From the NCBI RefSeq assembly GCF_001194135.2, contig NC_068998.1, positions 50,092,364-50,156,363 on the forward strand: a stretch of DNA of 64,000 nucleotides, read 5' to 3'. The translations under genes were made by a program, and so were the position numbers. The stretch is from Octopus bimaculoides. Lineage: Eukaryota. The notes under the pieces were generated by a model, which worked only from the letters and a program-made list of their open reading frames with translations, was not told where the DNA came from and ran no database searches. Positions 22,901 to 64,000 of the stretch are shown one piece after another (within the stretch, counting starts at the first letter, position 1; each line of letters begins with the position of its first letter).

Positions 22901-23399
22901 NNNNNNNNNNNNNNNNNNNNNNNNNNNNNNNNNNNNNNNNNNNNNNNNNNNNNNNNNNNNNNNNNNNNNNNNNNNNNNNNNNNNNNNNNNNNNNNNNNNN
23001 NNNNNNNNNNNNNNNNNNNNNNNNNNNNNNNNNNNNNNNNNNNNNNNNNNNNNNNNNNNNNNNNNNNNNNNNNNNNNNNNNNNNNNNNNNNNNNNNNNNN
23101 NNNNNNNNNNNNNNNNNNNNNNNNNNNNNNNNNNNNNNNNNNNNNNNNNNNNNNNNNNNNNNNNNNNNNNNNNNNNNNNNNNNNNNNNNNNNNNNNNNNN
23201 NNNNNNNNNNNNNNNNNNNNNNNNNNNNNNNNNNNNNNNNNNNNNNNNNNNNNNNNNNNNNNNNNNNNNNNNNNNNNNNNNNNNNNNNNNNNNNNNNNNN
23301 NNNNNNNNNNNNNNNNNNNNNNNNNNNNNNNNNNNNNNNNNNNNNNNNNNNNNNNNNNNNNNNNNNNNNNNNNNNNNNNNNNNNNNNNNNNNNNNNNNN

Positions 23400-23444
<45 letters not shown>

Positions 23445-27436: not shown

Positions 27437-27476
<40 letters not shown>

Positions 27477-29696: not shown

Positions 29697-29731
<35 letters not shown>

Positions 29732-30247
29732 GTATGTGTGTTTGTCCGTGCAACTTTGGGGACTAATTGCTACGTTTAAACTTTGGGTTACCTACTGTTT
29801 ATTCATGGATGGGATATACATCCATCAGTGTCAGTGGTTGACGACAACACTATATCTGTTCTGAAATTCCATCGTTGTTTTCGGGTCTCAAGCAATTTTC
29901 ACTAAGAAATACAGCACTTTTTACAAGAAAAGTGTTCTATTTCTATTTCATCTCTGTCAAAAACAAAGAACTTGAATAGATGAAAAGATCGATATTTCAC
30001 TGGTGGTTATACCCATTACTATTGTGATCCGTACCAGTTTTCTTCTGGAAATACCGTACTCATTTATGTGGGAAATAATAACATTAGGTAATAAATGTAA
30101 TATTATATGACGGCAAATTCGTGTATGCATCTCATCAAAATACTTTCACTCTGTATCAATAAATTTTCTATTCTATTCTCTTTACAGATGAAATTTCAGG
30201 CAATTTTCACTGCTGTACTTGTAGTTACATTACAAATGCATAATTAA
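26734..30247 (+). CDS. Gene E: 99-aa family member lacking Cys3 and Cys6
   Basis: Exons 26734-26770, 27144-27234, 28047-28128, 29309-29338, 30188-30247: MILSVFTFVLLFGAAVSVSCTGNALNFCKSELKNYLGHDFGRVAYRNYLACAKRNAPGCNEIVLAEFGISPGRCSVIREKMKFQAIFTAVLVVTLQMHN*. Confidence 0.9.
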
Positions 30248-33400: not shown

Positions 33401-33715
33401 ATGGTTCTTTCTTTGCTTACTTTTGCCCTCTTATTTGGTAGGTAGAGATATCATAATTATTTACTTAATTCTTAATATCACGATAATTTTCAATATATTT
33501 AAGTATATTGCATCAATCAGTCTAAATACTGCATATTATTTATGTATTATAGGCTTATACACTTGTATATTTGTATACGGATTAAAATGCGATGAATATG
33601 TAGTCATTTACACTTAGGCATTTATCGATTTATCGATATCTGTCCCATTTTCATATGTATATATATAATATAGAGATATATGCATTCGCAGACATACACA
33701 CACGCATACAGATTG

Positions 33716-33759
<44 letters not shown>

Positions 33760-36700: not shown

Positions 36701-37109
36701 TANNNNNNNNNNNNNNNNNNNNNNNNNNNNNNNNNNNNNNNNNNNNNNNNNNNNNNNNNNNNNNNNNNNNNNNNNNNNNNNNNNNNNNNNNNNNNNNNNN
36801 NNNNNNNNNNNNNNNNNNNNNNNNNNNNNNNNNNNNNNNNNNNNNNNNNNNNNNNNNNNNNNNNNNNNNNNNNNNNNNNNNNNNNNNNNNNNNNNNNNNN
36901 NNNNNNNNNNNNNNNNNNNNNNNNNNNNNNNNNNNNNNNNNNNNNNNNNNNNNNNNNNNNNNNNNNNNNNNNNNNNNNNNNNNNNNNNNNNNNNNNNNNN
37001 NNNNNNNNNNNNNNNNNNNNNNNNNNNNNNNNNNNNNNNNNNNNNNNNNNNNNNNNNNNNNNNNNNNNNNNNNNNNNNNNNNNNNNNNNNNNNNNNNNNN
37101 NNNNNNNNN

Positions 37110-37140
<31 letters not shown>

Positions 37141-40884: not shown

Positions 40885-44381
<3,497 letters not shown>

Positions 44382-45864: not shown

Positions 45865-47147
45865 GTAAGTATTTATACATAGTTTAAGAACAAAATTGTA
45901 TTAGGGGTTTCAAACACAGGTTCAATCTTTTCTTAGAAACACGGTCTTACTGTTCTCCTGTTTTAATTTATGCTGCTTGTTGTTTGAGAAGAGACTGACA
46001 TTAAACTACTTTCACAGATGGAATTTTACGTCCCGTTTTGTAAACCAGAGAAAGAAAAGTCCATAATACAACAGTCTCAACGCAAGCTTTTCACTTGTGA
46101 GATGTACGTCGCTCTTTTTAATATTTCATAGAACTCTACGAAGACGGTTTTTGATCAGGACAATCTTGATTATATATAACAATACAAAATCATATTTCTT
46201 ACTCACTTACAACGTGAATTCTTCAAGATATTGTCACTACTGCTAAGGAAGAGCATTGAATTTTAATTGGATTTTTATGTTGTTATAGCGTTTCAGTTCG
46301 TAGATCAGATAAGCAATAATTAGGACAGTAAATACTAATAATTTAGACAAATCGGTTTAAGAATCGTTACACTGACATATTTCGATCAGATTTCACAAAT
46401 ATAATTTGTTCGTAGTTGTTTTTGTAAACAAAGTATCGTGTGCCTTTTGGCTGAGAATGGCTTCGTTAAGCGGTGCCGATTTTTACAATACTGTAAATAA
46501 TAATAACAGAATTTTATAAGCTTGAAGCTTATAGCGGTCAACGCGCATGATGTTCACTTATAACAGTACTTCGAGTTTAAGTGGCCCCAAGTTAAAAGTT
46601 TATCGTGAAAGGAAGTGTAAGGCATACACTCAAAATGAAATTTAATATTCTGCACTGTCTTATTCGCAATGAAATAACGACACTGCATATGCCTTAATGG
46701 GTGTTTCAGATGGCACTGAACGCATTTATATGGACAGCAACATCTAAAAAAAAACCTCAATCACAAAAGTTAACGTATAAAGAATTACTGTTGCATATTT
46801 CGAGCATTGCAAGTGTGAGATCTTATGTGTGTATATGAGGGAGCATTTCGTAAATCAGCGTGTGTGCATTTGAGTATGTTTCCGATCGGATTCTCTGCAA
46901 AAGTACAGTAGGGTTTTTCTTTTCTTTTATATTGTCTACTTATTCGAGAAGTTACATTTGTCGGGTGAAAGATAATGCGTAGGAACAGTTGGTTAGCATA
47001 TAATATTTCAGCTTGTCCAAACATATCACGGTATTTAATATCGTGAAGTGCAACATATGTTACATTGTGTTTCATTAAGATAAAGCACCTCTCAGACATT
47101 GTTATATCATTAGTTATATTCATTGAAGCTGAAACGACAACACCGAA

Positions 47148-47488
47148 ATGAATACTTCTGTGTTTATTTGTCTTCTCTTATTTGGTAAGTTGCTAAGCGT
47201 CGATGATTTTTTTTCCTTACATATTCACTTGTCAATAATTTTCCGTATATTTCTCTTATCACGTATGCGTATATGTACCTATGTATTTGCCTACACTTGA
47301 AAAATTACCAGGTAAATGTGAATTTATAGTCTTCGTATTTACATATTTAGCTATTTATCACTGTCCATCCTTTTGTTGCTATGTATCTCCCTGTGCGCTC
47401 GCGTATGTTATGTGCATGTATACATAGACCTATATATATATTTTATGTATGTGGATTTATTGGATGAATCTGTATTTGTGTGTATGTC

Positions 47489-47519
<31 letters not shown>

Positions 47520-50089
47520 GTGTGTGTGTGTGTGAATGTACTATATGTGGAGTATGTCCTCGAAATGTGGCCCCACTTCAGGAATTCCAAAATCTAAGGA
47601 GTGGGAAACCTTCTCTTAATGGCATCTGCTTTGCCTCGAACTTTAATACCAAGAATCCTCTATGGACCAATTCTAATTCTCTTTAGACAAGAAATCTAAA
47701 CTAAAATTCAACTTTGGTTGCTTCCACCTCTGAGTGCGATTTCAGAGGTAGCCATGGCGGGCATAATCAGACGAGGGACTTAATTTCTATAAAATATTTT
47801 AGAGAATCTCTTCGTAATACTATTTGCATAATGATTTTTGATAATCTGAAATCTACACTACGAAATATGAAAGACCTAATGTATTCATTTTCTAGGTTCC
47901 GTTGTCTCAGATACGTGCATGGAACTCGCACTTAGTGTATGTAAAATGGATTACATTGCATATTTGACGAATAGGTCCCACTGCAAGTATGTATTATTAG
48001 ATTGCAATGTTTCACATTCATATATATTTTCACACTTTTTTCTATATGTATATATGTTTGCGCGCGCACACACACACTTATACACACATATATATGTATG
48101 TAGGTATATATACATACATGTGTGTGTGTGAGGGCGCATGGCTCAGTGGTTAGAGCATCGCACTTGCGATCGTGAGGTTGTGAGTACGATTCCCGGGCAG
48201 GGCTGCGTCTTGTTTTCTTGAGCAAGACACTTTATGTCACGTTGCTCAAGTTCATTCAGCTATAGAAATGAGTTGCTATCCCATAGTTTTCCATGCCTGG
48301 AGCGGGTCACCCTTCACCCTTTATATATATATATTTATGGATATAAGTATATATATATATATATATNNNNNNNNNNACATGTATGTATGCATGTATGTAT
48401 TTATTCAAAAGAGTAAGAGTTTACAAACGATTAAATCTAGATATTGTAAAATAAATGAATGCTGTTATAAAATTGAGATCAGTTACATGGAACAAAGTGT
48501 GTTGATAAATAACATGTGAAGACTGGGAGAAATGTTAAATGTATCGAGTACTACAATTTATTTAATCGGAGCTCGCATGCTCCTACAGCAGTGATTTTTA
48601 ACGATATGTAGAAATTCATTTCTCAGGGACTTGATATTATATCCTACTTAAAATTATATCTTTGTACTCAAATTAGGACTGAAAACCAATTCAATGGATT
48701 CTTCAAACGGCTTTAGGTAGATATTTTATTCCTAATATTTGTACACAATTATTCAGATCCAGCGGCGAGTTTATGACATAAATCTCCTCTTAAATTTGTA
48801 GTTTTTAACACACACTAGAAGGAGAAAAGATAAATTTAAATACGATTGTTATGGTGCCTCAATATAATGATGAGGGCGATTTGAACATTAACGTTTTAAC
48901 TTCTGAATTAAGACAAATTTGTATTCCAGGACACGTAAAGAGTTTATGAACTGCTTTAAAGGAGAGGATGATTACTGTTACACTCAATTTCACAAACTGC
49001 TTTCTTGCAAGGTAAGATGTTTGTCATTCCCGTAATTTTGTGGAAGACAATTGCAGCAAATAATGAAAGTAATAAGCAATATACGATAACGTAAATATTC
49101 CATACCGTAATGCAAGAGTTTTGACTGCCACACTCAGCCAAAGCAAGGATATTGCCTTCTTTCTTTTCACACTGATTACACTATATACTGCGCGTTGATC
49201 GAAGGAGGTTGTATACAGATTATTAGGAATATATTTATAACGTAACATTAAATGCAACTATGTTTTGTTCATTCACTATTCATTATACTTTCGCACTGTA
49301 CTTTCAGATGCATAACTCTAGCAACCGACGGGAGGTACGTTGATTTAATTGTTACTGAACTGTTAATGAACTGTTTTTACTGAATTATGTTTTATATAAA
49401 TCTCGTTTCTCGATAGCATCATTTTTTTCATATTAGTCTTGAGCTCGTTCACAGTGACATCTTGAATTATACACAGCATATCATTACAATTCTAATATAT
49501 TAACAATTCTTATATAAGTTGCTTATTATTCCTAATACCTTAAATAATTGATCATACAGTCGAAGTAAATATCGAAGATATATTCCAGGGGACTGAAGAT
49601 TCAAGATCAAGAAAATCTATGTGATAGCTTCTCTGCCAAATGTGATAAAAAAAACAACATTTATAGGGGAATCCAGCTGGATTCACCTCAGCCTGAAAGT
49701 GTTTCACCGAGTAGCCAGCACTGCTTCCTTCAATGGGGAGCTAGGGCAGAATGACACATCGTTGATAAAAACATTTCATCAACCGTATCTTTATCAGCTC
49801 AACAAATATAAACTGGTCTTGAAATTGAGATATATCGACCTTTTCTCCGTTTTTTTTTTGTTTTTTCTTAGGTTTCTTGCCACTTTTCACCAAGACTAAC
49901 TTAACTAACCTTGGTACAAAATAACATGCAGTAATGCATTGTAAACTATATAGAGAACATTTTTATATACGTCAAATCACACTATTTTCAATATGCATGA
50001 ATAACCATAGTTTTCAATTCTCTTTACAGATAAAACTTCAACCACTGTTCCTTCCAGCTATTGTGTTTACATCGGTCATGCGTGACTAA
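47148..50089 (+). CDS. Gene H: 98-aa signal-peptide, 6-Cys, putative GPI-anchored protein
   Basis: Exons 47148-47184, 47896-47986, 48930-49011, 49308-49334, 50030-50089: MNTSVFICLLLFGSVVSDTCMELALSVCKMDYIAYLTNRSHCKTRKEFMNCFKGEDDYCYTQFHKLLSCKMHNSSNRREIKLQPLFLPAIVFTSVMRD*. Confidence 0.92.
48132..48280 (+). mobile_element. tRNA-derived SINE (5' part)
   Basis: GGCGCATGGCTCAGTGGTTAGAGC...GTACGATTCC then CTTGAGCAAGACACTTTATGTCACGTTGCTC; a degenerate homolog lies at 40021-40175. Confidence 0.7.
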
Positions 50090-51059
50090 ATAAAGAGTAT
50101 TTTGCAATAATGTACTGATTTCGTTATTTTGTAATTATGACACCATGTAATTTTTCTTTTTTTTTTCTTTGGTCAGTGCTACTTCCTATTTGTTTCTATA
50201 TGTAAATTTAAGGAAAAGACTAATATTTCCTTCAAACTGTGATTGTTTGAACCGAACAACAATGATTTGCAACTAACCAACATTTCATTACATTTCAGAG
50301 AGAAATTCAGCGCTGATTTGCTGAAGCGGGATAATAGTTAAAGCAAAAATGCTGTTCAATACCATAGACTTGCTTAAGCATTTATGCATGTCCCTTAGGT
50401 TTGCCAATATGTGCATTTTGAAACATGAGCCGGAATAGTGGGGGAGTATTATAGGCATATAGTGACAAGGATTCTATGTGGTGCAAATGAGTACAGGAAA
50501 AGCAAGTTGCCAAAGAAATATTAAATAGTTTCAATTTCTAGTCATATGTAAGGAGAATATAACAATCGCTACCACAGCACAATAGACGTGCTACGCAGTG
50601 TAATGTATACCAGAGGTATGTCTAAGGACTGTCACAAAAAAGGAAATACGAAAGCCAGAAATGTGTATATGTAAGTATGGTATATACATATATTCATTTT
50701 TATATAAATATATGTATATATAGACACATTCTATCATATATATGTACATATATGTACATTCATGCATACGCATACATACATACACAGCATGTGAGGGGCA
50801 GATTGTTGACATATTACACTTTTGATTTCGCTCATGTGCATTCATTATTTTTTATTTTGTCTACTACAAATATATTAGGTTCAGAAACACAGCACCATGA
50901 CGCAATTCACTCGGCAAGGAATATGGAACCGATATGCTGTACTGTCTGGCATAGGCGCTGGAAGCTTCAATACAAATATTTCAGAGTGTATGAGTGTCAA
51001 TCTGTGAACTTGCCGTTTTCCCAAAGCATGTACAGAGCGTGATAATAATCAAACATCCA

Positions 51060-51235
51060 GTAACTTCATTGGGTTTGTAGTGATCACTAGTGATAGTAAC
51101 AGTATGCTTCTATTCATCTTCTCACACGGTCACAGACTCAACACAGAGGCTTACGTAAAATGCCTGGGGGAGGTTGTGTTACCCTGGGTTACGAGGATGG
51201 CTGCTGGAAGAACCTGTATCTGGCAATATGAATAT
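51060..51235 (+). mobile_element. Tc1-like transposase remnant
   Basis: Translation HGHRLNTEAYVKCLGEVVLPWVTRMAAGRTCIWQ resembles the region preceding the second Asp (xQQD) of IS630/Tc1 DDE transposases. Confidence 0.65.
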
Positions 51236-51723
51236 GTTTTGTATTCTATACTCTTTCAAGCTGAACTCTCAGTCTGATTTCTTTGTTGCACGTGAAGTTA
51301 TATAACTAATGGAAATTTAAATAAAGAACATTCTACAATAATGTTCTGACGGCCTCATTTTATATTTATAATGGAAGTATTAGAAAAGTATGTCTGTAAA
51401 AGTGTCATAAATGTGGACAAAATTAAACGCCCGGGGGACATTTTTTATTTGTTCCACACTAACAAACTTTTAAGATCACCAGCATGGATAGAATATAATA
51501 TTTAAATTCATACTTGAGAAATGACGTTTTATGGCCAATCTTCAGTTTATAGGACTGGTGGTTTGAAACAGGTGTTAGAGATGTAAAAATACTAACGCAC
51601 ATGGTGCATAACTGCGCAGATACACACACGTACACACAAGCACCCATAAGTATGTGTGTATGTATATGCATATATATGTATGTGCTTGTGTGTTTAGATA
51701 CATACACGCACACACACACACAG

Positions 51724-51792
<69 letters not shown>

Positions 51793-51911
51793 TATATATA
51801 TTCATGTTTGCATGTATTTATGTATGCATGTATGTGTCTATTCATGTTTGCATGTATATGTGTATGTATGTATGTATGTATATACAGGGTGAGTCAAAAC
51901 TGCCTGCCACA

Positions 51912-52025
51912 TCATTATTATTATTATTGTTACTATTATTATCATCATTATTAGTATTATTGTTATTATTATTAGTATTACTATCATTAGTAGTAGTAGT
52001 AGTAGTAGCAGCAGCAGCAGCAGTG

Positions 52026-52078
<53 letters not shown>

Positions 52079-52095
52079 TGCAGTAGTATGATTAT
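51912..52095. repeat. (ATT)n(AGT)n(AGC)n compound microsatellite
   Basis: Seen directly. Confidence 0.95.
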
Positions 52096-52655
52096 TAAAT
52101 CTACCCATCTACGATGGAAGTATGAAATGCGGGAGGACAGTCGTAACAACTGTGTGCATTGAGAAATGTGTAAATAGACTTGAGAGAATACTGGGGATGT
52201 CTTAGAGAAATCACATTATTGTTGGTGGTACAACGTTGGATGGCAGCAGCATGCCATGAAATTGCGACTAATTGACATGTGATGAGGATTCACTATGGAA
52301 CTCAGTCTGTGTGAGTGTCAACATGCGTCCCTCCCTGTAGGATTTCCATCGGCACTTCTGAAAAAGTACAGCAGGCTGTTTCTTTTCTTCGATCTTGTCT
52401 CCTACTTCGTGATGTTTAATAAGTTTGGTGAGAAACAATTTCTTTATCATAAAATTATTCCCTTTGTTCTGTATGGTTATGAAATGACGTGTAGGAACAG
52501 TTAGAATACAATGTTTCACCTTGTTCCAACATACCATGATATTCAACATCCTGCGGTGCACCATGTGTTACATCGTTTTTAATTAAGGTAAAACACCTCT
52601 ATAACACTGTTATATCTTTATTCATATTCAAAGTAGCTGAATGGCAAAGACCGAA

Positions 52656-54019
52656 ATGAAACTTCCTGCATTTATTTTAGTTCTCTTCTTTGGTAAGTTG
52701 CTATGCGATCATCTTTTCTTTACATATATATTTGTCAATAACTTTCAGTACATCTCCATTATCAATCATTTGTATATGCACCTATATATTTGCCTATCCG
52801 TTACAATTAACATGTATATATAAATGTAATATTTTTTGTATATACGTATTTAACAATTTGTTACTAGCCATCACTTTGTTCTTACACAGACACACACATA
52901 TTTATATACACATATACACATGTGTGATTTGTAGGCATATATATATGTAGTATGTGCTCGTAATGCAGCTGTAGTTCATGAATTCCAAATGTTGAGTTGT
53001 GAGAAACCTCGTGTTAACGACTATTGTTGTTATGCATGATGTGGCCAGGAATCGTAGTGACAAGTTTTGTCTCGTTGGCATATGAACCAACATTTATTCG
53101 GTGTTGTATTATGCATAAAATGCATATTGAAATTCATTTTTGCTTGTTTCAAGCTCTATCGTGCCACCAGTCTAGTTACTGAGTGCGCCTTTAGACGTAG
53201 CATCGTTTGAAAATCATCAGACGAGGGATTTAATTACTATAAAATGTTTAAAAGTTACCCTCCATAAAGTAAAATTTATACTACGTAATGATGTTCATTT
53301 TCTAGGTTCCGTTCTCTCACAGGATTGCGATGATCTCGCAGTTAGGAATTGCGAATGGATATTTAACCTTTATACAGAGAGGAAAAACGATTGCAAGTAT
53401 GTAGTATTATTTTACTACATGTTATATTCATATAGTGTAAAGAAACTATTTTATTTGTATATGTATATAAGTGTGTGAGTATATATATATATATATATGT
53501 ATGTATGTAGGTATGTGAACGTCCTCTTAGGACCTCCCATTTAGTCCAGTCACACTGATATACCAGCCCCACGGCCCTTCATCGTCTTTCGTCCTCCTGG
53601 TATGGCATTCCCGCCTGGATCATGGCATTCTTGTCCCTAATGTCTGCTCCCTCCCATTATTGGAAAGTAGAAGAACCGAAGCCATAGGCACTTCTGCACT
53701 TGTATATCTATACTATATATAAAACGGAGGTGTGTGTGTAATCGCTTTTCACGTGAAAACGGCTTCACTATTTACTTCCATACTTGTGATACATAAATAA
53801 TTTGACCTCGGATAAATCTTAGGCTCTTCATTTGATTTTTTTATCTCTAATTAAAAATAAATAATATATAAAGCAATATTTATTTTTAATTAGAGATTAA
53901 AAAGATCAAATGAAGAGCCTAACATTTATCCGAGGTCAAATTATTTACGCATCACAAGTATGGAAGCATTAGGTGAAGTCGATTACACACACATCTCTGT
54001 TTTATATATAGTATAGATT

Positions 54020-54053
<34 letters not shown>

Positions 54054-56759
54054 CACACGCACACACACACACACTCTTCCATTTCATCTGATGTGTGATA
54101 CTCTGTGTGTATGCGTGCGCGTGCGTGTGTGCTTTCGTGCGTGCGTGAGGGGTTCCACAATCGCAATTTATTTCAATTACTCTTGTGAGGATATTCACGT
54201 AAATCATTTTTTTCATTTAAGCCACATTTTAATTTTCGTAAAAGTGTCCAAGTACCANNNNNNNNNNNNNNNNNNNNNNNNNNNNNNNNNNNNNNNNNNN
54301 NNNNNNNNNNNNNNNNNNNNNNNNNNNNNNNNNNNNNNNNNNNNNNNNNNNNNNNNNNNNNNNNNNNNNNNNNNNNNNNNNNNNNNNNNNNNNNNNNNNN
54401 NNNNNNNNNNNNNNNNNNNNNNNNNNNNNNNNNNNNNNNNNNNNNNNNNNNNNNNNNNNNNNNNNNNNNNNNNNNNNNNNNTATATATGGGAGAATATAC
54501 AAATAATAACAACAGACGAGGACAGGTGGTGTAAATAACAAAAGTATATATTAGTATGACGCTCGGGAATACGGAAAGTCTTTGACGTTTCGAGCTACGC
54601 TCTTCAACAGAAAGAATACGGAGACAAGGAGAAAAACACGGAGGAAAAAAATTGAATAGTGTTCAGTCAACGGTCAATCATAATAATGGCCGATCATAAC
54701 AATGGCTGACCGGAAGTTAGAAATTCTTATTTCAGGAGAGCTAAGAAAGGGGGATATATATATATATATTAAGTGCAACGTTGTATTTAATGAGAGCAAG
54801 CGCGCTTCTACAGGATATGTTTTTCTAAGATATAGAAATCCATTTGCTCAGGGGCTTAATATCAATCAATACTCAACATTATATCTTATTCAAATTAGCA
54901 CTGAAAACAAATGTAACTGATTCTTCCACCAGACGGTAGATATATATTTAATTATTAATGTTTTTACAACAAGATTCATATCCAGTCACATGGTTGCGAA
55001 GAAAAATCTCTCAGCATACATTCATACTTGTGATCAAATTTGTAGTTTCTAACAAACACTAGGAATAGGAAAAATAAAGTTAATCACACATGTTTTCTGA
55101 TATTTAAATATAATGATAAATTCGATTTGAACTTTTAATTTTCATCTCCTAAACTTCAGGATAAATTTGTATTTCAGCGCATACAGGAAATTTATGAGAT
55201 GCTTTCGTGGAGAAAGTCTATTCTGTTATACAATATACGAAAGCAGTCGTAATTGCAAGGTAAGATATTTGTTACTCTCATAACATTATGGGAGGCAATT
55301 ACATAAAAAAAAATGATATTAATAAACAATATTCCATACCGTAATTCATTCCATTTCATACACAAGGGAATTTATGAAAAAGGTTGAGATTTTGTTTTGC
55401 AATAGAAGCAATTAATAGTATTTCAACAAAAATAGAAATAGTTGGAAGTGGAAATTAAATAAATTATGCTATTTATTTGCGGCATGTACATTAGGTATTC
55501 GAAACATAACATCACAATCTAATGCAGGTGAGGTGTTATAGCAAAAACGTTTATGGCCCAATTTGGGTAACCCGCGTACAATTTAGTAAGAATTTATTTA
55601 CTAAGGGACATGAAATATTAGTACATTTTATTCATTCACTATTCATTATGCATTTCAGCCAATTGACGGCACGAGTGACCCACATGAGGTACGTTTATTT
55701 CATTGTAACTGAATTATTAATGAAATAATTTTACTGATTTACAATTGATATAAATTCCAATTATGGACATAATCTAGTTTTGCATATCTGTCGTCAGTAA
55801 CATCTTGAATTATACACAGAATATCGTTAGAATGCAACTATATTACATGTTTATAATTATTTTAATTAATATCATAATAGTATTAACAGTAGTATTAACA
55901 ATATGTAAAATAATACTTCAATATTATTACTATACATGAACTACGAATTTCGAATAACAATTCTCAATTCATTTTCATATTATCTGCATATATTTAAAAA
56001 TACATCATATTGTTGAAGTCAATATCGAAGATATTTTCCAGGGGACTGAACATTTAAGATTAACAAATGTGAAGAAAACAAACTTATATAACCTGGTCTT
56101 GAAATCAATATATCTCGGGCATTTTCGCAATTTTTTGGAGACCTTATAAATTTTCATGGAGAATCACCCAACTTATCTTTTTAGATTATATACAGAAAAT
56201 GTTTATATAAGTGAAATCACACTATTTTCGGTATTATTTAATTTTTTTTCACCTGTGGGATTTTCAATAAATATTTTTTTAAAAACTCGGATTTTTGCGT
56301 GGAATCAAGTACACTGACCTTCTAATATACTTCAAACTCTTTATATTTGTTTGGAAAAAAGGGGTAGGTGGGAAACCGGACTCCCTCCCCCGTATCCCGG
56401 TATCATAGAATTTTTTTTTTTTTATTCAATGTATTTCGGCGACCTCCTAATATGCTACAAAACCTATCTTTGATACGGAAAACGGGATGGGGTGAGATGG
56501 AAGCTGCGAATATTTCGCTCCCACTCTCATTCATATTTCCATCTTCACGATTTTCACTGGGAAAAGAAAATGGAAGTACACTGGCGCAAAAAATCCGATT
56601 TTTTTTTTCTTCTTAGTAACTATCTTGCGAGTGAAAGGATCAAATTTTACCCTATTTTCGATATGCGTGAATAACGTGAGTTTTCACTTCTCTTTACAGA
56701 TGAAACTTCAATCACTGTTCCTTCCTGCTGCTGTGGTTATATCGGTCATGCATGAATAA
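52656..56759 (+). CDS. Gene I: 99-aa signal-peptide, 6-Cys, putative GPI-anchored protein
   Basis: Exons 52656-52692, 53306-53396, 55178-55259, 55659-55688, 56700-56759: MKLPAFILVLFFGSVLSQDCDDLAVRNCEWIFNLYTERKNDCNAYRKFMRCFRGESLFCYTIYESSRNCKPIDGTSDPHEMKLQSLFLPAAVVISVMHE*. An in-frame upstream ATG at 52641 would add MAKTE. Confidence 0.92.
53706..54018. mobile_element. ~310 bp fold-back element with Helitron-like ends, in intron 2 of gene I
   Basis: The left arm ATCTATACTATATATAAAACGGAGGTGTGTGTGTAATCG... is the reverse complement of the right arm through to a ~13 nt loop near 53864-53876. Confidence 0.8.
54579..54615 (-). ncRNA. Second copy of the hammerhead-like motif
   Basis: Identical motif within a ~160 bp repeat (54482-54645) nearly identical to 5839-6000. 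Confidence 0.45.
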
Positions 56760-59700
56760 ATAAATCGTATTTTTGCAACAATAATGAATTAATTTTATAA
56801 TTTTGTAATTATGACACAACGTAATTTTTTTCTTCTTTTTTTGTTCTTCACTGAGAAAGTACAACTTACTAAATATTTCGATTTGGAAATTTAAAGAAAT
56901 GACAAATATTCCCTTCAAATGTTTGAACAGGATGACAATGTTTTGCTATAATCCAACATTCCATTGCATTTGAGACAGATGACGCCCTGAGTTGCTAAAG
57001 CAGTAATATAGTTGTAGCAAATAATCTGCAACATAACACAGATTTGCTTAAACATTTATGCATGTTCCTGAAGGTTACCAATACGTACGTCTTGCAGTTG
57101 TATATTTAAGAAACGAGGAATTATGTATAGTATTAATGTTATTTACATTTGACGGATATTTGTCCTCATTTTGTTTGTTGTTAATAGACAGAGAACGCCA
57201 CTGAAAAATACGAAAACTAAAAGAAGCAAGACATATGCTAGGACACAATAACCTCCTAAGCGGACTGAGTGCAGATATGAATAGCATATGGGATTGGTAT
57301 TAAAGAAAAATAGGAAAATATTAGATTTGTATAGGGATGAAGTGTGAAAATGATCTGGAAAAAATTGCATGCGTATTGTGTCATACATCGCACTATATCC
57401 TGACACACTTTCTTTCTATTTTATTTTCGCTATTAACCGTCCTCGTTACTCACCACGTATTTATGAAGAGGCCACGCACTATACGATGAAAAACATCTAG
57501 ATTTGCTCGTGGTCACTGAATTCTTAATCAAAATGCGACGATGATTTATTAATTCAACAATCAAACATCCACAAAATATTCATACTAAGAGACAGACAGA
57601 CGGACATAACGACCATTGTTGTAAGATGGGAAATATGCCCATCTTCGATGGGGAATTAAGGGATAATATTGCAAATCTAAACACTCTAAATTCATTAATT
57701 ATACAGGAGTGAAATCCAGAGTTATTCATCGACACCGGAATTTTAAGCATAGAAAGCAAAGGTGATTTATCAATACAAAACTCAAAATCCACTAAATAAT
57801 CACATCATTGCACATGTTTCCGCTAAAAGCCTACCTGATTATCTCCTTGATAATATTGAAAAACAACGTGACCATTGGTTCATCCATTTGATCATGAAGA
57901 GAGAAGACAGATGGACAGATGGACAGATAGACAGACGGAAATAATATCCATTAATAGTAAGATTTCATACGAAACATATATGTATAACAATTAAGATTTA
58001 TTTTGGCAATAAAATCATTTAATACTATTTCAGCAACAACAGAAAGCGCTGGATACCAAAGTGAACAATGGCCTGTGTTATTTATAAGCGTCATATAAAT
58101 CTCGGATGCATTGTTACAAATCTAACATCAAAATTCAATACAAGCATTGCACAAATAGCAAAACACAAGCAAGCTGTCACACTATACGTTTTAGCAGGAC
58201 ATGCAGGAGTTGCTAAAATAAATTCTTAAACATCCCACGCATAAATGTTTGCATGCTGTTTATATATGGAAATATAGAATGCACGTAAGCAGCATATACT
58301 ATGGTGCCAAGCCATAAATTTCTTCAATACTGCAAAATATACTTCTAATCTCCATTGTTAATACACACCTCAGATATTTCAAATGTTGCAAAAGGTTCCA
58401 TGATTATTTTGGTCATGGTTTGAAACGTTTTCTGTGGCTTATACTTTAAATACGACCACGTTACGGATAAGGTACATTTATTCTCTGTCTTGTATTGAGA
58501 GACACGTGTTGTAATTACTTCATTTACCTCGATGGTTTTGTTTTCGAAAGTAGCTGTCATTTTATTTAGTATAAATATAGTTTGTCTTAGAAATCTATAT
58601 TATACTCCTTATGTCCTGTATTGAGTAACGAATAATTTCCAAGATAACATTGCAACTGGTTTAGTAAGAATGTTATTGTCATTTAGTCTCAGGAAACATC
58701 GTCTCCAGGTCGCTATTCGTCACACTATCACTGTCCTTACATTTTCGAACAATGGATTTTAGCATGCCCACTCAGCGCAAATCGATATCTGTGTACTGCG
58801 AGTTCTGGTTTATTTCTCTTCGGCTTGAAGTGGCGCTGCAAATCTCTTGTTCGAAATACATAGTTTTCTTTCAAATATAACAAAAAATTAGCAGTGTCGC
58901 CTCTAGCAGAACAATTATTCCCAAAATCTCGAAACACTGATATCGTTTTGTGCTGTGTGGTGATGCTAAACTACCCCATCGTTCTTTCCTGTCCCCTGTC
59001 TGTCTTTTTTCCACTGAGATTCTTTTGTTTCTTCTCCCTTCTCATCACTCCTTTTGTTTCTTTCCCTCATTCTCTATTTTGTCTCCCTTCCAATCTGCCT
59101 CTTTGCTCACACGTGATTACTGGCCATTTCTATCATTTCTGTCTCTCCTAGACACGCCGTCCACATAGATTGACGTCATTTCTCTCACCCCCTACATAAT
59201 TTCTCTTCTACTATTTTCTTCTCTTATTTATTCTACATCCTTTCAGAACTTCTCCCTAGCGTTCCTAAACGTTTATCTTCGTCGATTTTTGACTCATTAT
59301 GTCCAATCTGTATTGTTTGTATCTTCGAAGCTCTTACTCACCATGAATTTTATATTTTTTAAAATTTGTGCATGCTGCTGTCTTCTGAAGTTTTCCTATC
59401 ATCTCGTTGAAAGGTAGAAAAACAGAGTAATAAAAAGTCGACAAATGAAGAGAAGTACGACTTCCTTTTTTATTTTGTGCCGTACTTCTTTCTGGTTGAG
59501 TGCTTGCTTGCTCTCTGGTTTATTTATTTTCCAACGTTGTTGATATCCTGTTGTTATTGTGTTTTTTTTTTATATTTTGTCCTGTACTTATCTCTCGTCC
59601 GGTTATGCGTTTTTAATTTATTGGTGATGTCCTGTACTTAATCTTAATGTTTTATTTGTACATATTTAAAAGTAAATGCCCAAGGTTTCTCAGATCTATA

Positions 59701-60086: not shown

Positions 60087-63000
60087 ATGAAAATTTCTGC
60101 ATTTATTTTTGTTCTCTATTTTGGTATGTTGCTATACTTTGATTATCTTTCTATGATTATTTAATTTAATGGTGCATTCAATGTACTTTGTTGTAAGAAT
60201 TGTTCTCCAGCGCATGACCAGTTCTCTTGCTGCATCTATTCGGAATTTATTGGCCCAGGGATAGAATAAACATTGAAATCACTAAATCATGCATCATCCC
60301 TACAGTTTTCCAACCCCCTTCGTTAGTGTTTCATATTTCTGTATCATATTATGCACTCATCTTTAATTCCACTATTTCATAGGACTCAGATTTCGAAACA
60401 TTGGGTCTCATTTTTTGCCTGGTTGACAATTACAACCTCTAAGCTTCCAGTCGAAATCCTTATACCATATTAAATAGGGAAGTCAGACTACAGCTTAAAT
60501 TTGTCAGTCACTTAGTTTCTGCTCATACTATTTCGCTGCTCTGGCAAACCCACATTTCTGTTATCATCCAATGATATATATAACAATATTATCGTGTCGT
60601 CTTTTGTACTTATACTTTGCCAAATTAGTGTATTCTGTTGCAGCATAGCTAACTGTGTTTTCGTTTCAAATGTTCTACATAATGATTGACCAATTCTAGA
60701 TTCCGCCTGGAACAGCGTTACATTTTTACTCTTCATAGAAAAACCCGTTTCGGACACAACACAATAACTGTCCCTACAGCTTCCTTAAACGAAACATTAT
60801 CCTATCTTATTTTCATTCAATTCTTTTTTATTCATTAAAACAAAAATATCATATTTTATCAATTTTCATTGTTTTTATGTTATTTTATTCATTTATTTCT
60901 GCTACTGTTATATTCATTCTTATATTTTATCTATTTATTATTTTCTGTTTTGTATCTTATTTGTTATTTTATTTCATTTTTTATCTAAGTTATTATTTCA
61001 TTATTTATTTTATTCTTTTTTTTTTTGTTATTTTATTACCGGGCGAAATGCTTAACGGTATTTGATCTGTCTTAACTTTCTCAGTATAAATTCCGCCGAA
61101 GTCGACGTTGCCTTTCATTCAGTACCAGTTGCATACTGATGCCGATCTAATCAACTGGCTCTCTCCCCGCAAATTTCTTCCCCAGATTACGAAAGTTATA
61201 TTTAATTTATTATATTTAACATTATTTAATTTTTATTATATTTGATTTAATTTAATCTTTTACGGCAAAATATACCGATACAATATGTAGTAGGCTAACA
61301 AGAGAAAGAGAGAGAGAGAGAGAGAATTATGGAGAGGGTGAAAGTTTCACACCACTGAAGACAATTCCAATTTAGACCCAGTGTTGGTGTCATCATCATA
61401 TATGTGCAGATTTAGTTTCGATGTGGAAGAAAATATTGTATTTCATGAACCCATTCATAATCTCATTTGAATAGAATATTTGATGTTTTAAATCATGAAA
61501 GTAATAATATTGTAAATATTGATTTCGTAGGGGTAGCCTTCTCCGACCATTGGAAGTGGTGTGAGGAAATGGGAAGGTCTCGTTGTCCAGATGGATATTT
61601 AGCTTCTAGAGGAAGTGACGTACGCTGTGAGTAAGTATCATCATACCTCTAAATATTCAATTACTTCACGTGTATAAAATTCATTTTCTCACAAACACAA
61701 TCTCATTTAATATATATGCAGCTACAGAGACATATATACACGTTTTAATACGAAGGTCTATAAACGAGGTGGTCCCGAAACGAAACAGGAATGTTGCAAT
61801 GTTATTTTATTATCTTAGTTTTACATATTTGCAACCTTATCACCTTTCAGGCATTCCCACCTTCAAAGCAATGCATCTGTACAGATGTGTTTTGCAGTGT
61901 TCGAAGCAGTGCTTGAACTCTTGCAAAATAATTCGATTTAACGCATCCTCCGGTTTTTCTTCACCTTTTCCATATCTGAAAATTCGGTAGCTCCAGCTTT
62001 CATCACCAGTGATGACCTTCGAAAAAAGAACCGGTTGAATTTCGAAACTGTGTACTAGAATCAAATCTCTCCTTCAAAATTTCCGATCAGTTTTATTAAG
62101 GTTCCGGCAGGAATGGAGTTGGGTGCATCCAGTAGACTGCATTTCCACGTTATCTGCAGGTCGGACGTTATTAGTTCTATTACATTTTGGTCCGAGAAGA
62201 TCGTCGTTGTCATCATATTATGGATGTGTACCGTGTGATTTGTGAAGCGGAGATCCAGGAAAAGTTTACTCTCTGTCAGGTGGAGCAGTATTTTCTCCAT
62301 AAAGTGCCTGTTTGTAAGGTGAAGCCGTAACTCTCGCACTGACATGGAGAAATTGACCTCAGAACATTCCATATTATTGATTGAAAAGTCTCTTAGAAAT
62401 ATGTGAAGGCTGTCACATATGTTGGTTTACATTTCTTTCATCTTTTTCAAACTCACTTCGAAAGAGTTCTCGTGATTTGGTACATTTGGTGAGTGATATT
62501 TTGTATATATTACTATTTTAATGGTAATATATTACAGCAGGTGAAATATATATGATGTCAATAGTGGCTACTTGCCTCATACATTTAGAGGCCTCAGAAG
62601 TGATTTCAGTGAATATATTGCTGATTGTAGTGGTCTTCTGTCCTGGGGATGGTTTCTCAGATCCAATGTATGATGAAGTCTATTTAGCTGTCTTCCAATC
62701 GTCCGTGCTATTACCGTCGCTGCCTGCATTGCATCTGCATATTCTTTCATTTTAGAAGCAGTGCGTGTGGCAAACATATATTTCCAGTTATAGATGTATG
62801 CCAGGCTGCGAGCATGTATTGCTAGAAACATTCCTGTCATGTTATCACCGAATCTACGTTCTCTCATCCTGCTACTTTACCTTTCTCAGTTCTGCTTCGC
62901 TGATTCACTAGATGGGTTGTCAGACCCGACAAACGACATTACCTTCACAATACTACCTACCACTTTACACTCATCTCTCCACTCACCACTTCTAATTCTG

Positions 63001-64000
63001 TTTCTCTGAAGCTGCTGGTCAGTCACATCCTCACTTTCCCTACACTGCCTCTCCTATTTCTTCTTGCTTTTCTTCTGATGCAACATTGTCCTCCAAACCT
63101 CAACGCCTTATGCCTCCATCCGAATGCATTCTACACTTAAATTTTTGTAATTATGATCTGAGAGTTTAGATGCTAGTCTCTCCACGAAGAAGAGGGAGGA
63201 ACGATTTACGATAATGTTTATATACATGCACTACTAATTGTATAGTCCTCAATGTTTGCACGCGCTATCTGGAAACATTGCAATTACATATTTTTTCAAA
63301 AATCGATGTTAAAGGTTACTTAATATTAATAGTGTGTAATATGTTCTCCAAAACCTGTTATAACTAGTATAAGGAAGTGTAGATACAAAAGCGATATTCA
63401 CAAACCAGTCAACACTGTTGGACACGACGGAAATGGGTGTCGCGCTAATTTTCTTCTTGCACACAAGGTAGTTATTTTATGAAATCTGAAAGCAGGAATA
63501 CCAAATTCTCTTCTTATTATTTTCTAAACATAACATATATAATTGTCAAATAAAAGTATATAAAATTATTAGATGGATGCAGTTGACGGTGATTGCATCC
63601 ATAACCCTTCCGTTCATTTTATTGCTGATACTCTACTCCCTCATCGTCACGACTGACCTATCACAGTTCTACATCCTCCACCATCTCTGATTACCTACAT
63701 GTATTGACAAACCCAACAACGACAAATTCACAATACTATCCATTACATCCCTCTCATGTCATGACTAACCATTTCTAATTCTGTTTCTCTCAATCCCCTG
63801 GTTACTCACCTCCTCGCTCTTCCTACACAGCCTCTCCTTTCTCTTCTAGCATATCCTCTACTGCAACACTCTCCAAAAATTTTGAATGTTCGCCTATTAA
63901 AGAAATGTCATTTCGTTTCATTTCAGGGGTTTCTTCAAATTTATGAAATGCTTTCAATGGTATGACAGAAAATGTGTCGAGTACTTTGGATACCACTCTC
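60087..64000 (+). CDS. Gene J (3'-partial): family member running off the window
   Basis: Exons 60087-60123, 61531-61630, 63927->64000: MKISAFIFVLYFGVAFSDHWKWCEEMGRSRCPDGYLASRGSDVRCEGFFKFMKCFQWYDRKCVEYFGYHS... Confidence 0.88.
61035..61185 (+). mobile_element. SINE-like dispersed repeat (second family)
   Basis: CCGGGCGAAATGCTTAACGG...AAATTCCGCCGAAGTCGACGTTGCCTTTCAT matches the family. Confidence 0.6.
61745..62400 (-). mobile_element. Mariner transposase remnant in intron 2 of gene J
   Basis: Minus strand LFSKVITGDESWSY (first catalytic Asp motif) is fused by deletion to a C-terminal EFKHCFEHCKTHLYRCIALK; a TIR-like sequence lies near 61750-61790. Confidence 0.75.
62905..63100. repeat. Degenerate repeat, second copy at ~63685-63875
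   Basis: Shared ACAATACTA...TTCTAATTCTGTTTCTCT...CCTACAC.GCCTCTCC; possibly an old LINE fragment. Confidence 0.5.

What the first reader, a model, noticed from the sequence alone, without database searches (positions are those of the whole stretch)
47148..56759. Mature-domain exons diverge faster than the tail exon and neighbouring intron (H versus I)
Hand counts: exon 3 differs at 37/82 nt (11/27 aa identical), exon 5 at 9/60 nt, and an alignable intron 1 segment (~47768-47801 versus ~53218-53251) at about 4/34 nt. Cys codons are retained. E versus G looks similar, with alignable introns but poorly matching exons 2-3. Established: conserved signal and flanks with a hypervariable Cys-framed mature region is the pattern of diversifying selection in toxin, immune and gamete-recognition families. 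Inference: an arms-race or recognition role. The intron segment was chosen because it aligns, which biases the comparison.
Basis: partly seen in the sequence, partly recalled or inferred. Interest (0 to 1): 0.72.

Follow-up and report, generated by a model that had tools for sequence, protein, structure and literature searches.

The report
Fast-evolving octopus surface-protein gene pair
Two neighbouring copies of an unstudied octopus gene for a small, cysteine-framed, probably lipid-anchored surface protein have changed their protein-coding core faster than the non-coding DNA around it, which points to selection for diversity; what the protein does is unknown.

Summary
H (47148-50089) and I (52656-56759) are intact five-exon genes in an Octopus bimaculoides tandem array. 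Both N gaps lie in intron 2. All hand counts reproduce exactly.

Exons 2-4 are 54.5% identical. The 100-nt intron flanks chosen by position are 68.4% identical (p=6e-4), and whole introns are 64% (p=0.007). Classical dN/dS is below 1 (0.68) but saturated. Codons that keep their amino acid show intron-like synonymous divergence, so hypermutation is unlikely. The excess sits in replaced codons. At 41 non-scaffold codons, 34 amino acids and 71/123 nt differ, against 22-27 and 34-44 expected at intron rates.

G versus D/E shows the same dip, clearly at exon 3 only. D versus E shows ordinary purifying selection. No tract looks like recent gene conversion.

The proteins carry a signal peptide, a four-helix six-Cys domain and a GPI-like tail. 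They belong to an uncharacterised family found only in Octopus, with at least 28 distinct RefSeq proteins on one chromosome and no Pfam or PDB relative.

Best reading: episodic diversifying selection on a surface-protein array. The pattern is a known kind; the family is new. Function, expression and ortholog-based tests remain open.

The parts
46874..50400 (+). Duplicated unit containing gene H. Homology with the I unit starts about 275 nt upstream of the ATG and ends about 310 nt after the stop codon.
   Evidence: Sliding-window identity; collinear BLAST HSPs.
47148..47184 (+). H exon 1: start codon and hydrophobic core of the signal peptide (MNTSVFICLLLF, then the first base of the Gly13 codon). 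Ends in phase 1.
   Evidence: It is 27/37 identical to I exon 1.
47896..47986 (+). H exon 2: signal-peptide cleavage region plus helices 1-2 with Cys1-3 (C-x7-C-x13-C).
   Evidence: It is 49/91 identical to I. The last 50-75 aligned columns of intron 1 just upstream are 74-82% identical.
48367..48376 (.). Assembly gap (10 N) inside H intron 2, next to a (TA)n microsatellite. It does not touch coding sequence.
48930..49011 (+). H exon 3: helices 3-4 with Cys4-6 (C-x7-C-x9-C).
   Evidence: It is 45/82 identical to I, against 68% for its 150-nt flanks (p=0.026).
49308..49334 (+). H exon 4: linker MHNSSNRRE, carrying the small-residue triad (NSS/SSN) that is the candidate GPI omega site.
50030..50089 (+). 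H exon 5: spacer, C-terminal hydrophobic tail (IKLQPLFLPAIVFTSVMRD) and stop codon.
   Evidence: It is 51/60 identical to I.
52343..57094 (+). Duplicated unit containing gene I, collinear with the H unit.
52656..52692 (+). I exon 1 (signal peptide, MKLPAFILVLFF).
53306..53396 (+). I exon 2 (cleavage region, Cys1-3).
54258..54481 (.). Assembly gap (224 N) inside I intron 2. Its right edge is a repeat that also borders another gap (5836-6000, 98.8% identical).
55178..55259 (+). I exon 3 (Cys4-6).
55659..55688 (+). I exon 4 (linker PIDGTSDPHE, candidate omega site DGT/GTS).
56700..56759 (+). I exon 5 (MKLQSLFLPAAVVISVMHE and stop codon).
40885..44381 (+). Paralog G, a complete six-Cys gene with exons 40885-40921, 41413-41503, 42484-42565, 43180-43209 and 44322-44381. 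Compared with D and E it shows the same exon-below-intron dip.
26734..30247 (+). Paralog D, a four-Cys variant lacking Cys3 and Cys6, with exons 26734-26770, 27144-27234, 28047-28128, 29309-29338 and 30188-30247.
33401..39548 (+). Paralog E, a four-Cys variant and sister of D, with exons 33401-33437, 36428-36518, 37907-37979, 38596-38622 and 39489-39548. The ancestral exon 3 acceptor is mutated from AG to AA.
8041..23941 (+). Paralogs A, B and C. A: exons 8041-8077, 9170-9263, 9520-9607; its 3' exons were not found. B: 12898-12937, 13407-13506, 14426-14510, 15616-15639, 17097-17156. C: 19902-19935, 20549-20645, 21103-21187, 21865-21891, 23894-23941.
60087..64000 (+). Paralog J, which is RefSeq LOC128249947. 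Exons 60087-60123, 61531-61630 and 63927 onward; it is cut by the end of the window.

Best explanation
H and I are old tandem duplicates (non-coding divergence K of about 0.35-0.5) in an Octopus bimaculoides array. The array belongs to an uncharacterised family found only in Octopus.

Each gene is modular:
- Exon 1 encodes the signal peptide.
- Exons 2 and 3 encode a four-helix domain of about 55 aa, held by six Cys.
- Exon 4 encodes a short linker with a small-residue triad.
- Exon 5 encodes a hydrophobic C-terminal tail. Together the linker and tail look like a GPI-attachment signal.

Since the duplication, purifying selection has kept the open frame, the splice sites, the signal peptide, the tail and about 16 scaffold residues (six Cys, Leu-Ala after Cys1, and several aromatics). 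Nearly every other codon of the mature domain has been replaced, often at two or three positions, at a rate above that of the adjacent introns. The most likely cause is episodic diversifying (positive) selection on the exposed surface of a cell-surface protein, with bursts after duplication followed by purifying selection, as in the D-E pair.

Shown here: the gene structure, the excess exon divergence, the intron-like synonymous rate at conserved codons, the conserved scaffold, and family membership.

Inferred: the GPI anchoring, the disulfide pattern (Cys3-Cys6, because D and E lost both together; the twin C-x7/8-C helices pairing Cys1/2 with Cys4/5), and any recognition function.
For: 1. Exons 2-4 are 54.5% identical, against 68.4% for position-chosen intron flanks (p=5.6e-4) and 64.3% for whole introns (p=0.007).

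2. pN is 0.443 (dN 0.67), against an intron p of 0.316 (K 0.41; p=0.005) or 0.357 for whole introns (p=0.046). That gives dN/K(intron) of about 1.4-1.9.

3. I defined the scaffold from the rest of the family, leaving H and I out. The 41 non-scaffold codons show 34 aa differences, against 22-27 expected at intron rates (P=3e-4 to 7e-3). They show 71/123 nt differences against 34-44 expected (P<1e-4).

4. There is no sign of exon hypermutation. Of 19 codons whose amino acid is conserved, only 4 differ synonymously, about 0.36 per synonymous site, which matches the intron rate. In the unsaturated D-E pair, pS of 0.324 matches the intron p of 0.333.

5. The pattern is replicated. D-G gives 55.2% against 69.6% (p=2.7e-4) and E-G gives 51.3% against 65.9% (p=3.9e-4). 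D-G exon 3 is 48.8% identical against 74.7% for its 150-nt flanks (p=2e-5).

6. The genes are maintained. The probability of no stop codon in 98 codons at this divergence is about 0.02, yet D, G, H and I are all intact with canonical splice sites.

7. No recent conversion is visible. The highest identity in any 100 aligned columns is 0.87, and the longest exact run is 20 nt.

8. Family and architecture: 35 profile hits, of which 28 cluster representatives are uncharacterised O. bimaculoides RefSeq proteins on one 55.56-Mb chromosome. The AlphaFold2 core has block-mean pLDDT of 82-90 over four helices. GPI-like features recur across members.
Against: - Classical pairwise dN/dS for exons 2-3 is 0.68 (NG86), 0.9 (LWL85) and unstable by ML. 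The formal criterion of omega above 1 is therefore not met. The comparison is saturated, with 75 differences in 37 replaced codons.
- Counted over the whole domain, 37/57 aa differences is within neutral expectation (31-37). The excess appears only at nucleotide level, or after constrained positions are set aside.
- The exon 2 dip alone is not significant (p=0.14), and it merges with an unalignable 5' part of intron 2.
- The intron yardstick may be slightly inflated by gap optimisation and by splice-signal constraint.
- These are paralog comparisons with few sites. There are no orthologs and no polymorphism data.
- No transcript evidence exists for H or I, and neither is in the protein collection.
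Confidence: 0.6

Rival explanations
1. Relaxed constraint rather than positive selection. Only the Cys scaffold, signal peptide and tail are constrained, and the remaining positions drift neutrally. On this view the apparent excess over introns arises because the intron yardstick is too low, through gap-optimised alignment, splice-proximal constraint, or regulatory elements in the introns.
For: - dN/dS is below 1.
- The whole-domain count of amino-acid differences (37/57) is within neutral expectation.
- Using the most conservative yardstick (whole introns, p=0.357), the pN test is only p=0.046. At p=0.40 the non-scaffold amino-acid test is p=0.046.
Against: - Nucleotide differences at non-scaffold codons (71/123) exceed even the p=0.40 expectation (49; P=1e-4).
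- Synonymous divergence at conserved codons (H-I) and pS (D-E) both match the intron figure, so introns are not unusually conserved.
- Whole-intron alignments include non-homologous transposon and microsatellite stretches, which bias the yardstick the other way.
- Three comparisons give the same result, though D-G and E-G share G and so are not independent.
Confidence: 0.2
2. Mosaic history. The non-coding backbone of H and I is young or was homogenised. Exon 2 and/or exon 3, with short adjacent stretches, were overwritten by gene conversion or unequal exchange from a more distant paralog. The exons would then simply have a deeper common ancestor than the introns.
For: - The array is prone to rearrangement. 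There is an orphan exon 1 copy at 31606-31642.
- D-E are closer in the central block (76-78%) than at either end (70-72%).
- In H-I the two ends (76-80%) are somewhat more similar than the central introns.
- The H-I exon 2 dip continues into poorly aligned 5' intron 2.
- The mature domains of H and I are no closer to each other (17/51) than to distant family members (up to 21/52).
Against: - It would need separate short tracts that coincide with exon boundaries. Exon 3 is flanked on both sides by 65-76% identical intron in H-I, D-G and E-G.
- No candidate donor exists. No window paralog and no representative from the 1.84-billion-protein library exceeds about 40% identity to the H or I mature domain.
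- Synonymous divergence at conserved codons is intron-like rather than deeper.
Confidence: 0.13
3. Exon-targeted hypermutation. A mutational mechanism raises the substitution rate in the mature-domain exons, as was once proposed for conopeptides.
For: NG86 pS in exons 2-3 (0.55) exceeds the intron p (0.32-0.36).
Against: - The high pS is an artefact of multi-hit replaced codons. At the 19 codons whose amino acid is unchanged, only 4 differ, about 0.36 per synonymous site, which equals the intron rate.
- In D-E, pS (0.324) matches the intron p (0.333).
Confidence: 0.04
4. Artefact or dead genes. H and/or I would be pseudogenes or chimeric assemblies across the gaps, and the divergence would be decay.
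For: - H and I are absent from the protein collection.
- Each gene has a gap in intron 2.
- The neighbouring gene E has a mutated acceptor site.
Against: - Decay cannot exceed the intron rate.
- Both ORFs, all 16 splice sites, all 12 Cys codons and both signal and tail modules are intact. The probability of an open frame under neutrality is about 0.02 per gene.
- Both halves of I are the best match to the corresponding halves of H.
Confidence: 0.03

Closest known systems
Conotoxin-type gene superfamilies of cone snails. The pattern of a conserved signal, hypervariable Cys-framework mature exon and better-conserved introns is cited from my own knowledge (Olivera et al. 1999; Conticello et al. 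2001).
   Same: Both are molluscan. Both have a modular exon structure, a conserved signal exon and a mature region with invariant Cys and hypervariable inter-Cys residues. In both, the mature exon diverges more than adjacent non-coding DNA, and both expand by tandem or segmental duplication.
   Different: This family has no propeptide, an alpha-helical domain of about 55 aa split over two exons, and a C-terminal hydrophobic GPI-like tail, so the protein is probably membrane-bound rather than an injected soluble peptide. There is no sequence or Pfam relationship. Synonymous sites are not accelerated here.
Accelerated evolution of snake venom PLA2 and three-finger toxin genes, with exons more divergent than introns and UTRs. 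Cited from my own knowledge (Nakashima et al. 1993, 1995).
   Same: The diagnostic observation is the same: protein-coding exons of paralogs differ more than their introns and flanks, and replacement changes dominate.
   Different: The fold, taxon and biology differ. Here the evidence comes from a few paralog pairs within one window, and the conventional dN/dS is saturated.
Ly6/uPAR (three-finger) family of small GPI-anchored Cys-rich surface proteins. Cited from my own knowledge.
   Same: The overall layout matches: signal peptide, a disulfide-rich domain of about 60-80 aa, a GPI signal, one module per exon, clustered tandem paralogs and fast evolution of some members.
   Different: Ly6 domains are beta-structured with 8-10 Cys. 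This domain is predicted to be all-helical with 6 Cys. There is no Pfam UPAR_LY6 hit and no Foldseek hit.
MgCRP-I peptides of Mytilus galloprovincialis (PMC4558851, abstract as listed).
   Same: Another lineage-restricted molluscan family with a conserved leader and a hypervariable mature peptide carrying six invariant Cys.
   Different: The MgCRP-I peptides are short secreted peptides with a pre-pro region and no membrane tail. I did not test any sequence relationship. Their abstract compares their Cys pattern with those of other Cys-rich peptides, not with a helical bundle.
CHCH / twin Cx9C helix-hairpin domain (Pfam PF06747).
   Same: Pairs of Cys spaced about two helical turns apart on consecutive helices (C-x7-C and C-x7/8-C), which suggests a disulfide-stapled helical hairpin. 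Protein G gives a weak Pfam hit (E=0.031, 14.9 bits).
   Different: The hit is far below the gathering score of 27.2 bits, covers only 12 residues and occurs in one of eight proteins. CHCH proteins are mitochondrial and have no signal peptide.

Membership tests
Octopus uncharacterised six-Cys family (RefSeq LOC128249756...249947 series; unnamed) | Significant profile similarity over the full length to the annotated members | tested here: met
   A profile of the window paralogs hits 35 library proteins at E<1e-3, with the best at 4e-22. Of these, 28 cluster representatives are O. bimaculoides 'uncharacterized protein' on one 55.56-Mb contig. Others come from O. vulgaris and O. sinensis. Window gene J is identical to XP_052830549.
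Octopus uncharacterised six-Cys family (RefSeq LOC128249756...249947 series; unnamed) | Shared architecture: signal peptide, C-x7-C-x13/14-C-x8-C-x7/8-C-x9/11-C, small-residue linker and hydrophobic C-terminus | tested here: met
   The alignment of 27 members has Cys1, 2, 4 and 5 invariant and Cys3 and 6 in at least 90%.
GPI-anchored proteins (a functional class) | N-terminal signal peptide, plus a C-terminal signal made of a small omega/omega+2 triad, a polar spacer of about 6-10 residues and a hydrophobic stretch of 12-20 residues that ends at or near the C-terminus | tested here: met
   H has NSS/SSN, the spacer RREIKLQ and a 12-residue window with mean hydropathy of 2.2 that ends 2 residues from the C-terminus. 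The layout is similar in I, G, B, E and 11 database members. This is sequence evidence only; no dedicated predictor was available.
GPI-anchored proteins (a functional class) | Actual lipid anchoring (release by PI-PLC, detergent partitioning) | not testable with these tools
   This needs an experiment.
Conotoxin / venom peptide superfamilies | Homology of the signal sequence to a named superfamily, a propeptide, and venom-gland expression | tested here: not met
   No Pfam family reaches threshold, and every significant homolog is an uncharacterised Octopus protein. No propeptide lies between the signal peptide and Cys1. Expression was not testable.
Ly6/uPAR | UPAR_LY6 domain (three-finger beta fold, 8-10 Cys) | tested here: not met
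   There is no Pfam hit at E up to 10. The model is all-helical with 6 Cys, and Foldseek against the PDB finds nothing.
CHCH (PF06747) | Score above the gathering threshold, with a twin Cx9C motif | tested here: not met
   14.9 bits against a cut-off of 27.2, in one of eight proteins.
RAMP extracellular domain | Structural similarity to the three-helix, three-disulfide RAMP ectodomain, plus a full transmembrane helix and a cytoplasmic tail | tested here: not met
   6umg_R appears only at E=7.1 with probability 0.04 for the full-length model, and disappears with the mature-domain model. The tail is too short for a transmembrane helix and there is no cytoplasmic part.
Genes under diversifying selection (an evolutionary class) | Replacement rate above the neutral rate | tested here: inconclusive
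   dN/K(intron) is 1.4-1.9 and significant, but dN/dS is 0.68 and saturated. Site models on orthologs could not be run.

The most novel reading that the evidence does not exclude
The window samples a previously undescribed superfamily found only in Octopus. Its members would be GPI-anchored, disulfide-stapled four-helix surface proteins with a fold that has no relative in Pfam or the PDB. There are dozens of tandem copies on one chromosome, and their exposed surfaces are driven apart by positive selection. That would make it a new hypervariable cell-surface 'label' or ligand repertoire. Possible uses include self/non-self or conspecific recognition at the skin or suckers, neuronal identity, gamete recognition, or modulation of the expanded octopus receptor families.
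Probability: 0.3. Interest if true: 0.8.

Novelty: new variant of a known kind. Interest (0 to 1): 0.55.

Why it matters
Cephalopod genomes hold many lineage-specific genes of unknown role. This study defines one such family by structure and evolution:
- a modular five-exon gene;
- a predicted helical six-Cys domain without known relatives;
- a likely GPI anchor;
- at least 28 distinct copies on one O. bimaculoides chromosome;
- a signature of faster-than-neutral change on the non-scaffold residues.

Families with these properties in other animals serve in recognition, immunity, reproduction or receptor modulation. This array is therefore a concrete candidate for a recognition or signalling system in an octopus. 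It is directly testable through expression mapping, PI-PLC release and binding screens.

The case also illustrates that saturated paralogs can hide selection from pairwise dN/dS, while an intron yardstick still shows it.

Several intact genes in this window (A-I) appear to be missing from the protein collection, so the family is probably under-annotated.

Tried and rejected
- A protein word-index search with H found nothing. A search with a 27-sequence alignment returned only 5 members. That tool is evidently insensitive for this family, so I did not spend the third search.
- Pfam at E up to 10 gave nothing except a sub-threshold CHCH fragment.
- Neither an HMM search against PDB sequences nor Foldseek against the PDB with two models gave a significant match. 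The RAMP1 ectodomain at E=7 was rejected.
I worked around this with rows that omit those residues.
No orthologous or transcript DNA could be fetched, so codeml-type site models, MK tests and expression checks were impossible.
- Biopython ML and YN00 dN/dS on exons 2-3 were unstable or failed because of saturation. I do not rely on them.
- I first assigned the exon 1 at 31606 to gene E. BLAST collinearity showed that the true exon 1 is at 33401, so the 5'-end values for E are void. With that correction, the idea that D is a strong D/G-D/E mosaic weakened to a mild central excess of D-E similarity.
- ARAGORN finds no tRNA in the SINE-like element.
- Four literature searches found no description of this family.
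- A scan for long ORFs showed only gap and microsatellite artefacts.

Full report
WHAT IS THERE

The window is AT-rich (about 33% GC) and full of microsatellites and assembly gaps. On the + strand it carries a tandem array of small five-exon genes. I rebuilt the models by splice-site and phase-aware scanning.

- The array holds nine genes, which I label A, B, C, D, E, G, H, I and J, plus one orphan exon 1 at 31606-31642.
- Both have exons of 37/91/82/27-30/60 nt, GT-AG at every intron, and intact ORFs of 98 and 99 aa.
- Gene J is identical over its three in-window exons to RefSeq XP_052830549 (LOC128249947, Octopus bimaculoides). This identifies the organism and independently validates the exon junctions I inferred for the family.

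THE GAPS (TESTED FIRST)

- 48367-48376 lies in H intron 2, 380 nt after exon 2 and 553 nt before exon 3.
- 54258-54481 lies in I intron 2, 861 nt after exon 2 and 696 nt before exon 3.
- No codon spans a gap.
- H and I are collinear on both sides of both gaps.
- D and G have a gap-free intron 2 with the same phases.
- Only the lengths of intron 2 are uncertain.

CHECK OF THE OBSERVATION

Every hand count reproduces: exon 3 at 37/82 nt and 11/27 aa, exon 5 at 9/60 nt, and the intron segment at 4/34 nt. Exon 2 is just as diverged, at 42/91 nt.

I replaced it with yardsticks chosen by position.

- The 100 nt on each side of exons 2-4 are 389/569 = 68.4% identical, against 109/200 = 54.5% for the exons (p=5.6e-4).
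- Whole introns, aligned globally, are 70, 60, 64 and 64% identical, pooled 64.3% (p=0.007).
- These whole introns include transposon and microsatellite stretches that are not homologous. The same aligner gives 43-46% on shuffled sequence.
- A sliding window shows that the duplicated unit runs from about 46874 to about 50400. Homologous non-coding blocks are 70-86% identical. Unalignable insertions sit at about 48050-48500, 49120-49200 and 49515-49700.
- Clear dips occur at exon 2 (0.40-0.60, directly after 0.74-0.82 in the last part of intron 1) and at exon 3.
- Taken singly, exon 3 is significant (p=0.026) and exon 2 is not (p=0.14), because its downstream flank is poorly alignable.
- Exon 5 (85%) is not better conserved than its immediate flanks (79%, p=0.42). 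The whole 3' end, including about 310 nt after the stop codon, is well conserved.

SELECTION, RELAXATION, MUTATION OR CONVERSION?

Pairwise dN/dS for exons 2-3 is 0.68 (NG86: pN 0.443, pS 0.548, dN 0.67, dS 0.98). ML and YN00 are unstable. The comparison is saturated: the 37 replaced codons carry 75 differences.

The high pS is an artefact of these multi-hit codons. Among the 19 degenerate codons whose amino acid is unchanged, only 4 differ. That is about 4 differences in 11 synonymous sites, or 0.36, which equals the intron figure. In the unsaturated D-E pair, pS (0.324) equals the intron p (0.333). Introns are therefore a fair neutral yardstick, and there is no sign of exon-specific hypermutation.

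Against that yardstick:

- pN exceeds intron divergence in H-I (0.443 vs 0.316, p=0.005; vs 0.357 for whole introns, p=0.046).
- The same holds in D-G (0.484 vs 0.304, p=1.6e-4) and E-G (0.514 vs 0.341, p=3e-4).
- JC-corrected, dN/K(intron) is about 1.4-1.9 for H-I and about 2 for G against D or E.

Simulation at intron-level divergence shows two things.

- The total nucleotide differences (79/171) are too many (binomial P=3e-7 at p=0.28, 5e-5 at p=0.316 and 0.003 at p=0.357; in 20,000 simulations none reached 79 at the first two rates).
- The raw count of amino-acid differences (37/57) is within neutral expectation.

The excess becomes clear once constrained positions are set aside in a way that does not depend on H or I. 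I defined 16 scaffold columns from the other 25 family members in the alignment. H and I are identical at 13 of them. At the remaining 41 codons, 34 amino acids differ (22-27 expected; P=3e-4 to 7e-3) and 71/123 nt differ (34-44 expected; P<1e-4).

Pure decay is excluded. An unconstrained copy would keep an open 98-codon frame with probability of about 0.02, yet H, I, G and D are all intact.

Recent gene conversion of the introns is not seen. No 100-column window exceeds 87% identity, and the longest exact run is 20 nt.

The inverse scenario is that the exons were overwritten from distant paralogs. It cannot be fully excluded, for three reasons.

- The array does rearrange, as the orphan exon 1 shows.
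- D-E have a mild central excess of similarity.
- The mature domains of H and I are no closer to each other (17/51) than to distant members (up to 21/52).

Against it, no candidate donor exists among the window paralogs or in the profile search of 1.84 billion proteins. It would also require tracts that coincide with exon boundaries, and synonymous divergence at conserved codons is not deeper than intronic divergence.

The pattern is episodic. D and E, which are of similar age by their introns, have exons 2-4 that are more conserved than their introns (77.5% vs 66.7%, p=0.005; dN/dS 0.55).

WHAT THE GENES ENCODE

The alignment of the window paralogs with database members shows this layout:

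- a signal peptide (exon 1 and the start of exon 2);
- a domain of about 55 aa with C-x7-C-x13/14-C (exon 2) and C-x7/8-C-x9/11-C (exon 3);
- conserved Leu-Ala after Cys1 and several conserved aromatics;
- a short linker rich in Ser, Asn and Gly (exon 4);
- a C-terminal stretch of 12-17 hydrophobic residues that ends 0-3 residues from the terminus (exon 5).

The small-residue triad lies 8-12 residues upstream of the hydrophobic stretch. Together with the lack of a cytoplasmic tail, this is the canonical layout of a GPI-attachment signal. This rests on sequence features only.

AlphaFold2 predicts four short helices with block-mean pLDDT of 82-90 in the core.

D and E have lost Cys3 and Cys6 together. 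This suggests a Cys3-Cys6 disulfide, with the two C-x7/8-C helices cross-linked to each other. That pairing is inference.

RELATIVES

- No Pfam family matches.
- No PDB sequence matches.
- No Foldseek match is significant.
- A profile search returns 35 proteins at E<1e-3.
- Of the cluster representatives checked, 28 are 'uncharacterized protein' of O. bimaculoides on a single 55.56-Mb chromosome. One is on another chromosome. A few come from O. vulgaris and O. sinensis, and some of those have 2-4 tandem domains.
- Nothing from other cephalopods or molluscs reached significance.
- Four literature searches found no description of the family.
- H was not found in the protein collection, and none of the window genes other than J appeared among the profile hits. 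They appear to be unannotated.

VERDICT

The interpretation of diversifying selection is the best-supported explanation, at about 0.6. It rests on dN against introns, not on dN/dS, and it is not independently confirmed by orthologs or polymorphism.

The arms-race or recognition role is plausible by analogy with conotoxins, snake toxins, Ly6-type surface proteins and MgCRP-I, but it is untested. The evolutionary mode is a known kind. The family, with its helical six-Cys domain, likely GPI anchor and Octopus-only distribution, is new and unstudied.

Noticed in passing
window 27144-27234 and 28047-28128 (D); 36428-36518 and 37907-37979 (E): Paralogs D and E have both lost Cys3 (end of exon 2) and Cys6 (end of exon 3), while keeping Cys1, 2, 4 and 5. 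A joint loss suggests that Cys3 and Cys6 form a disulfide and defines a four-Cys subfamily. D has a new Cys in exon 4 (PGRCSVIREK).
   Followed up: partly
window 37890-37910 (E intron 2 / exon 3 boundary): The ancestral exon 3 acceptor of E is mutated from AG to AA (compare ccag|ggcg in D with ccaa|ggtg in E). An AG 1 nt downstream would shift the frame. An AG 9 nt downstream (exon start 37907) keeps the frame but drops 3 codons. E may be a pseudogene or may use the cryptic site.
   Followed up: partly
window 31606-31642: An orphan exon 1 copy (MNIFAFIIFLLF, GT donor) lies 1.8 kb upstream of the true exon 1 of E (33401-33437). No exons 2-5 lie between them. It is a partial duplication, or a remnant of a lost gene.
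   Followed up: partly
window 12898-12943: Exon 1 of gene B ends at a GC donor (g|gcaagt) instead of GT. This is either a minor-class GC-AG intron or a disabled gene.
   Followed up: no
window 54482-54646 and 5836-6000: A 165-nt stretch is 98.8% identical between these two places, and each copy sits immediately to the right of an assembly gap. It is a young repeat that breaks the assembly, or a scaffolding artefact.
   Followed up: no
window 53702-54022: A palindromic element of about 320 nt (about 80% self-complementary, MITE-like) lies inside intron 2 of I and is absent from H.
   Followed up: no
window 48119-48300 (H intron 2) and 40006-40161: A SINE-like insert with a tRNA-like 5' part (gggcgcatggctcagtggttagagc...) occurs in both places at 69% identity. 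ARAGORN calls no tRNA. It is absent from the corresponding place in I.
   Followed up: partly
database protein P0018 (WP_234446203.1): A family member (signal peptide plus six-Cys domain, uninterrupted) is filed as a partial 'Campylobacter fetus' hypothetical protein on a 322-bp contig. This is almost certainly contamination. Because the contig is intron-less, it probably derives from a spliced cephalopod transcript, which is indirect evidence that some member is expressed.
   Followed up: no
database proteins P0027, P0015, P0034/P0040 (O. vulgaris, O. sinensis): Some predicted proteins in the other two Octopus species carry 2-4 copies of the domain in one chain. They are either true multi-domain members or fused gene models of adjacent tandem genes.
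   Followed up: no
window genes A-I (8041-56759): Of the nine genes in the window, only J matches a protein in the collections searched. The other eight, at least four of them fully intact, appear to be unannotated, so the family is probably larger than RefSeq suggests.
   Followed up: partly
window 50090-50400 vs 56760-57094: The roughly 310 nt after the stop codon of H and I are 66-86% identical in 50-column windows (about 76% overall by BLAST), as good as or better than any intron. This suggests a conserved 3' UTR or a somewhat younger 3' block.
   Followed up: partly
window 51690-52090: The H-I intergenic spacer holds a long compound microsatellite block: (CA)n, (TA)n of about 70 nt, (ATT/GTT)n, then (AGT)n of about 100 nt.
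   Followed up: no
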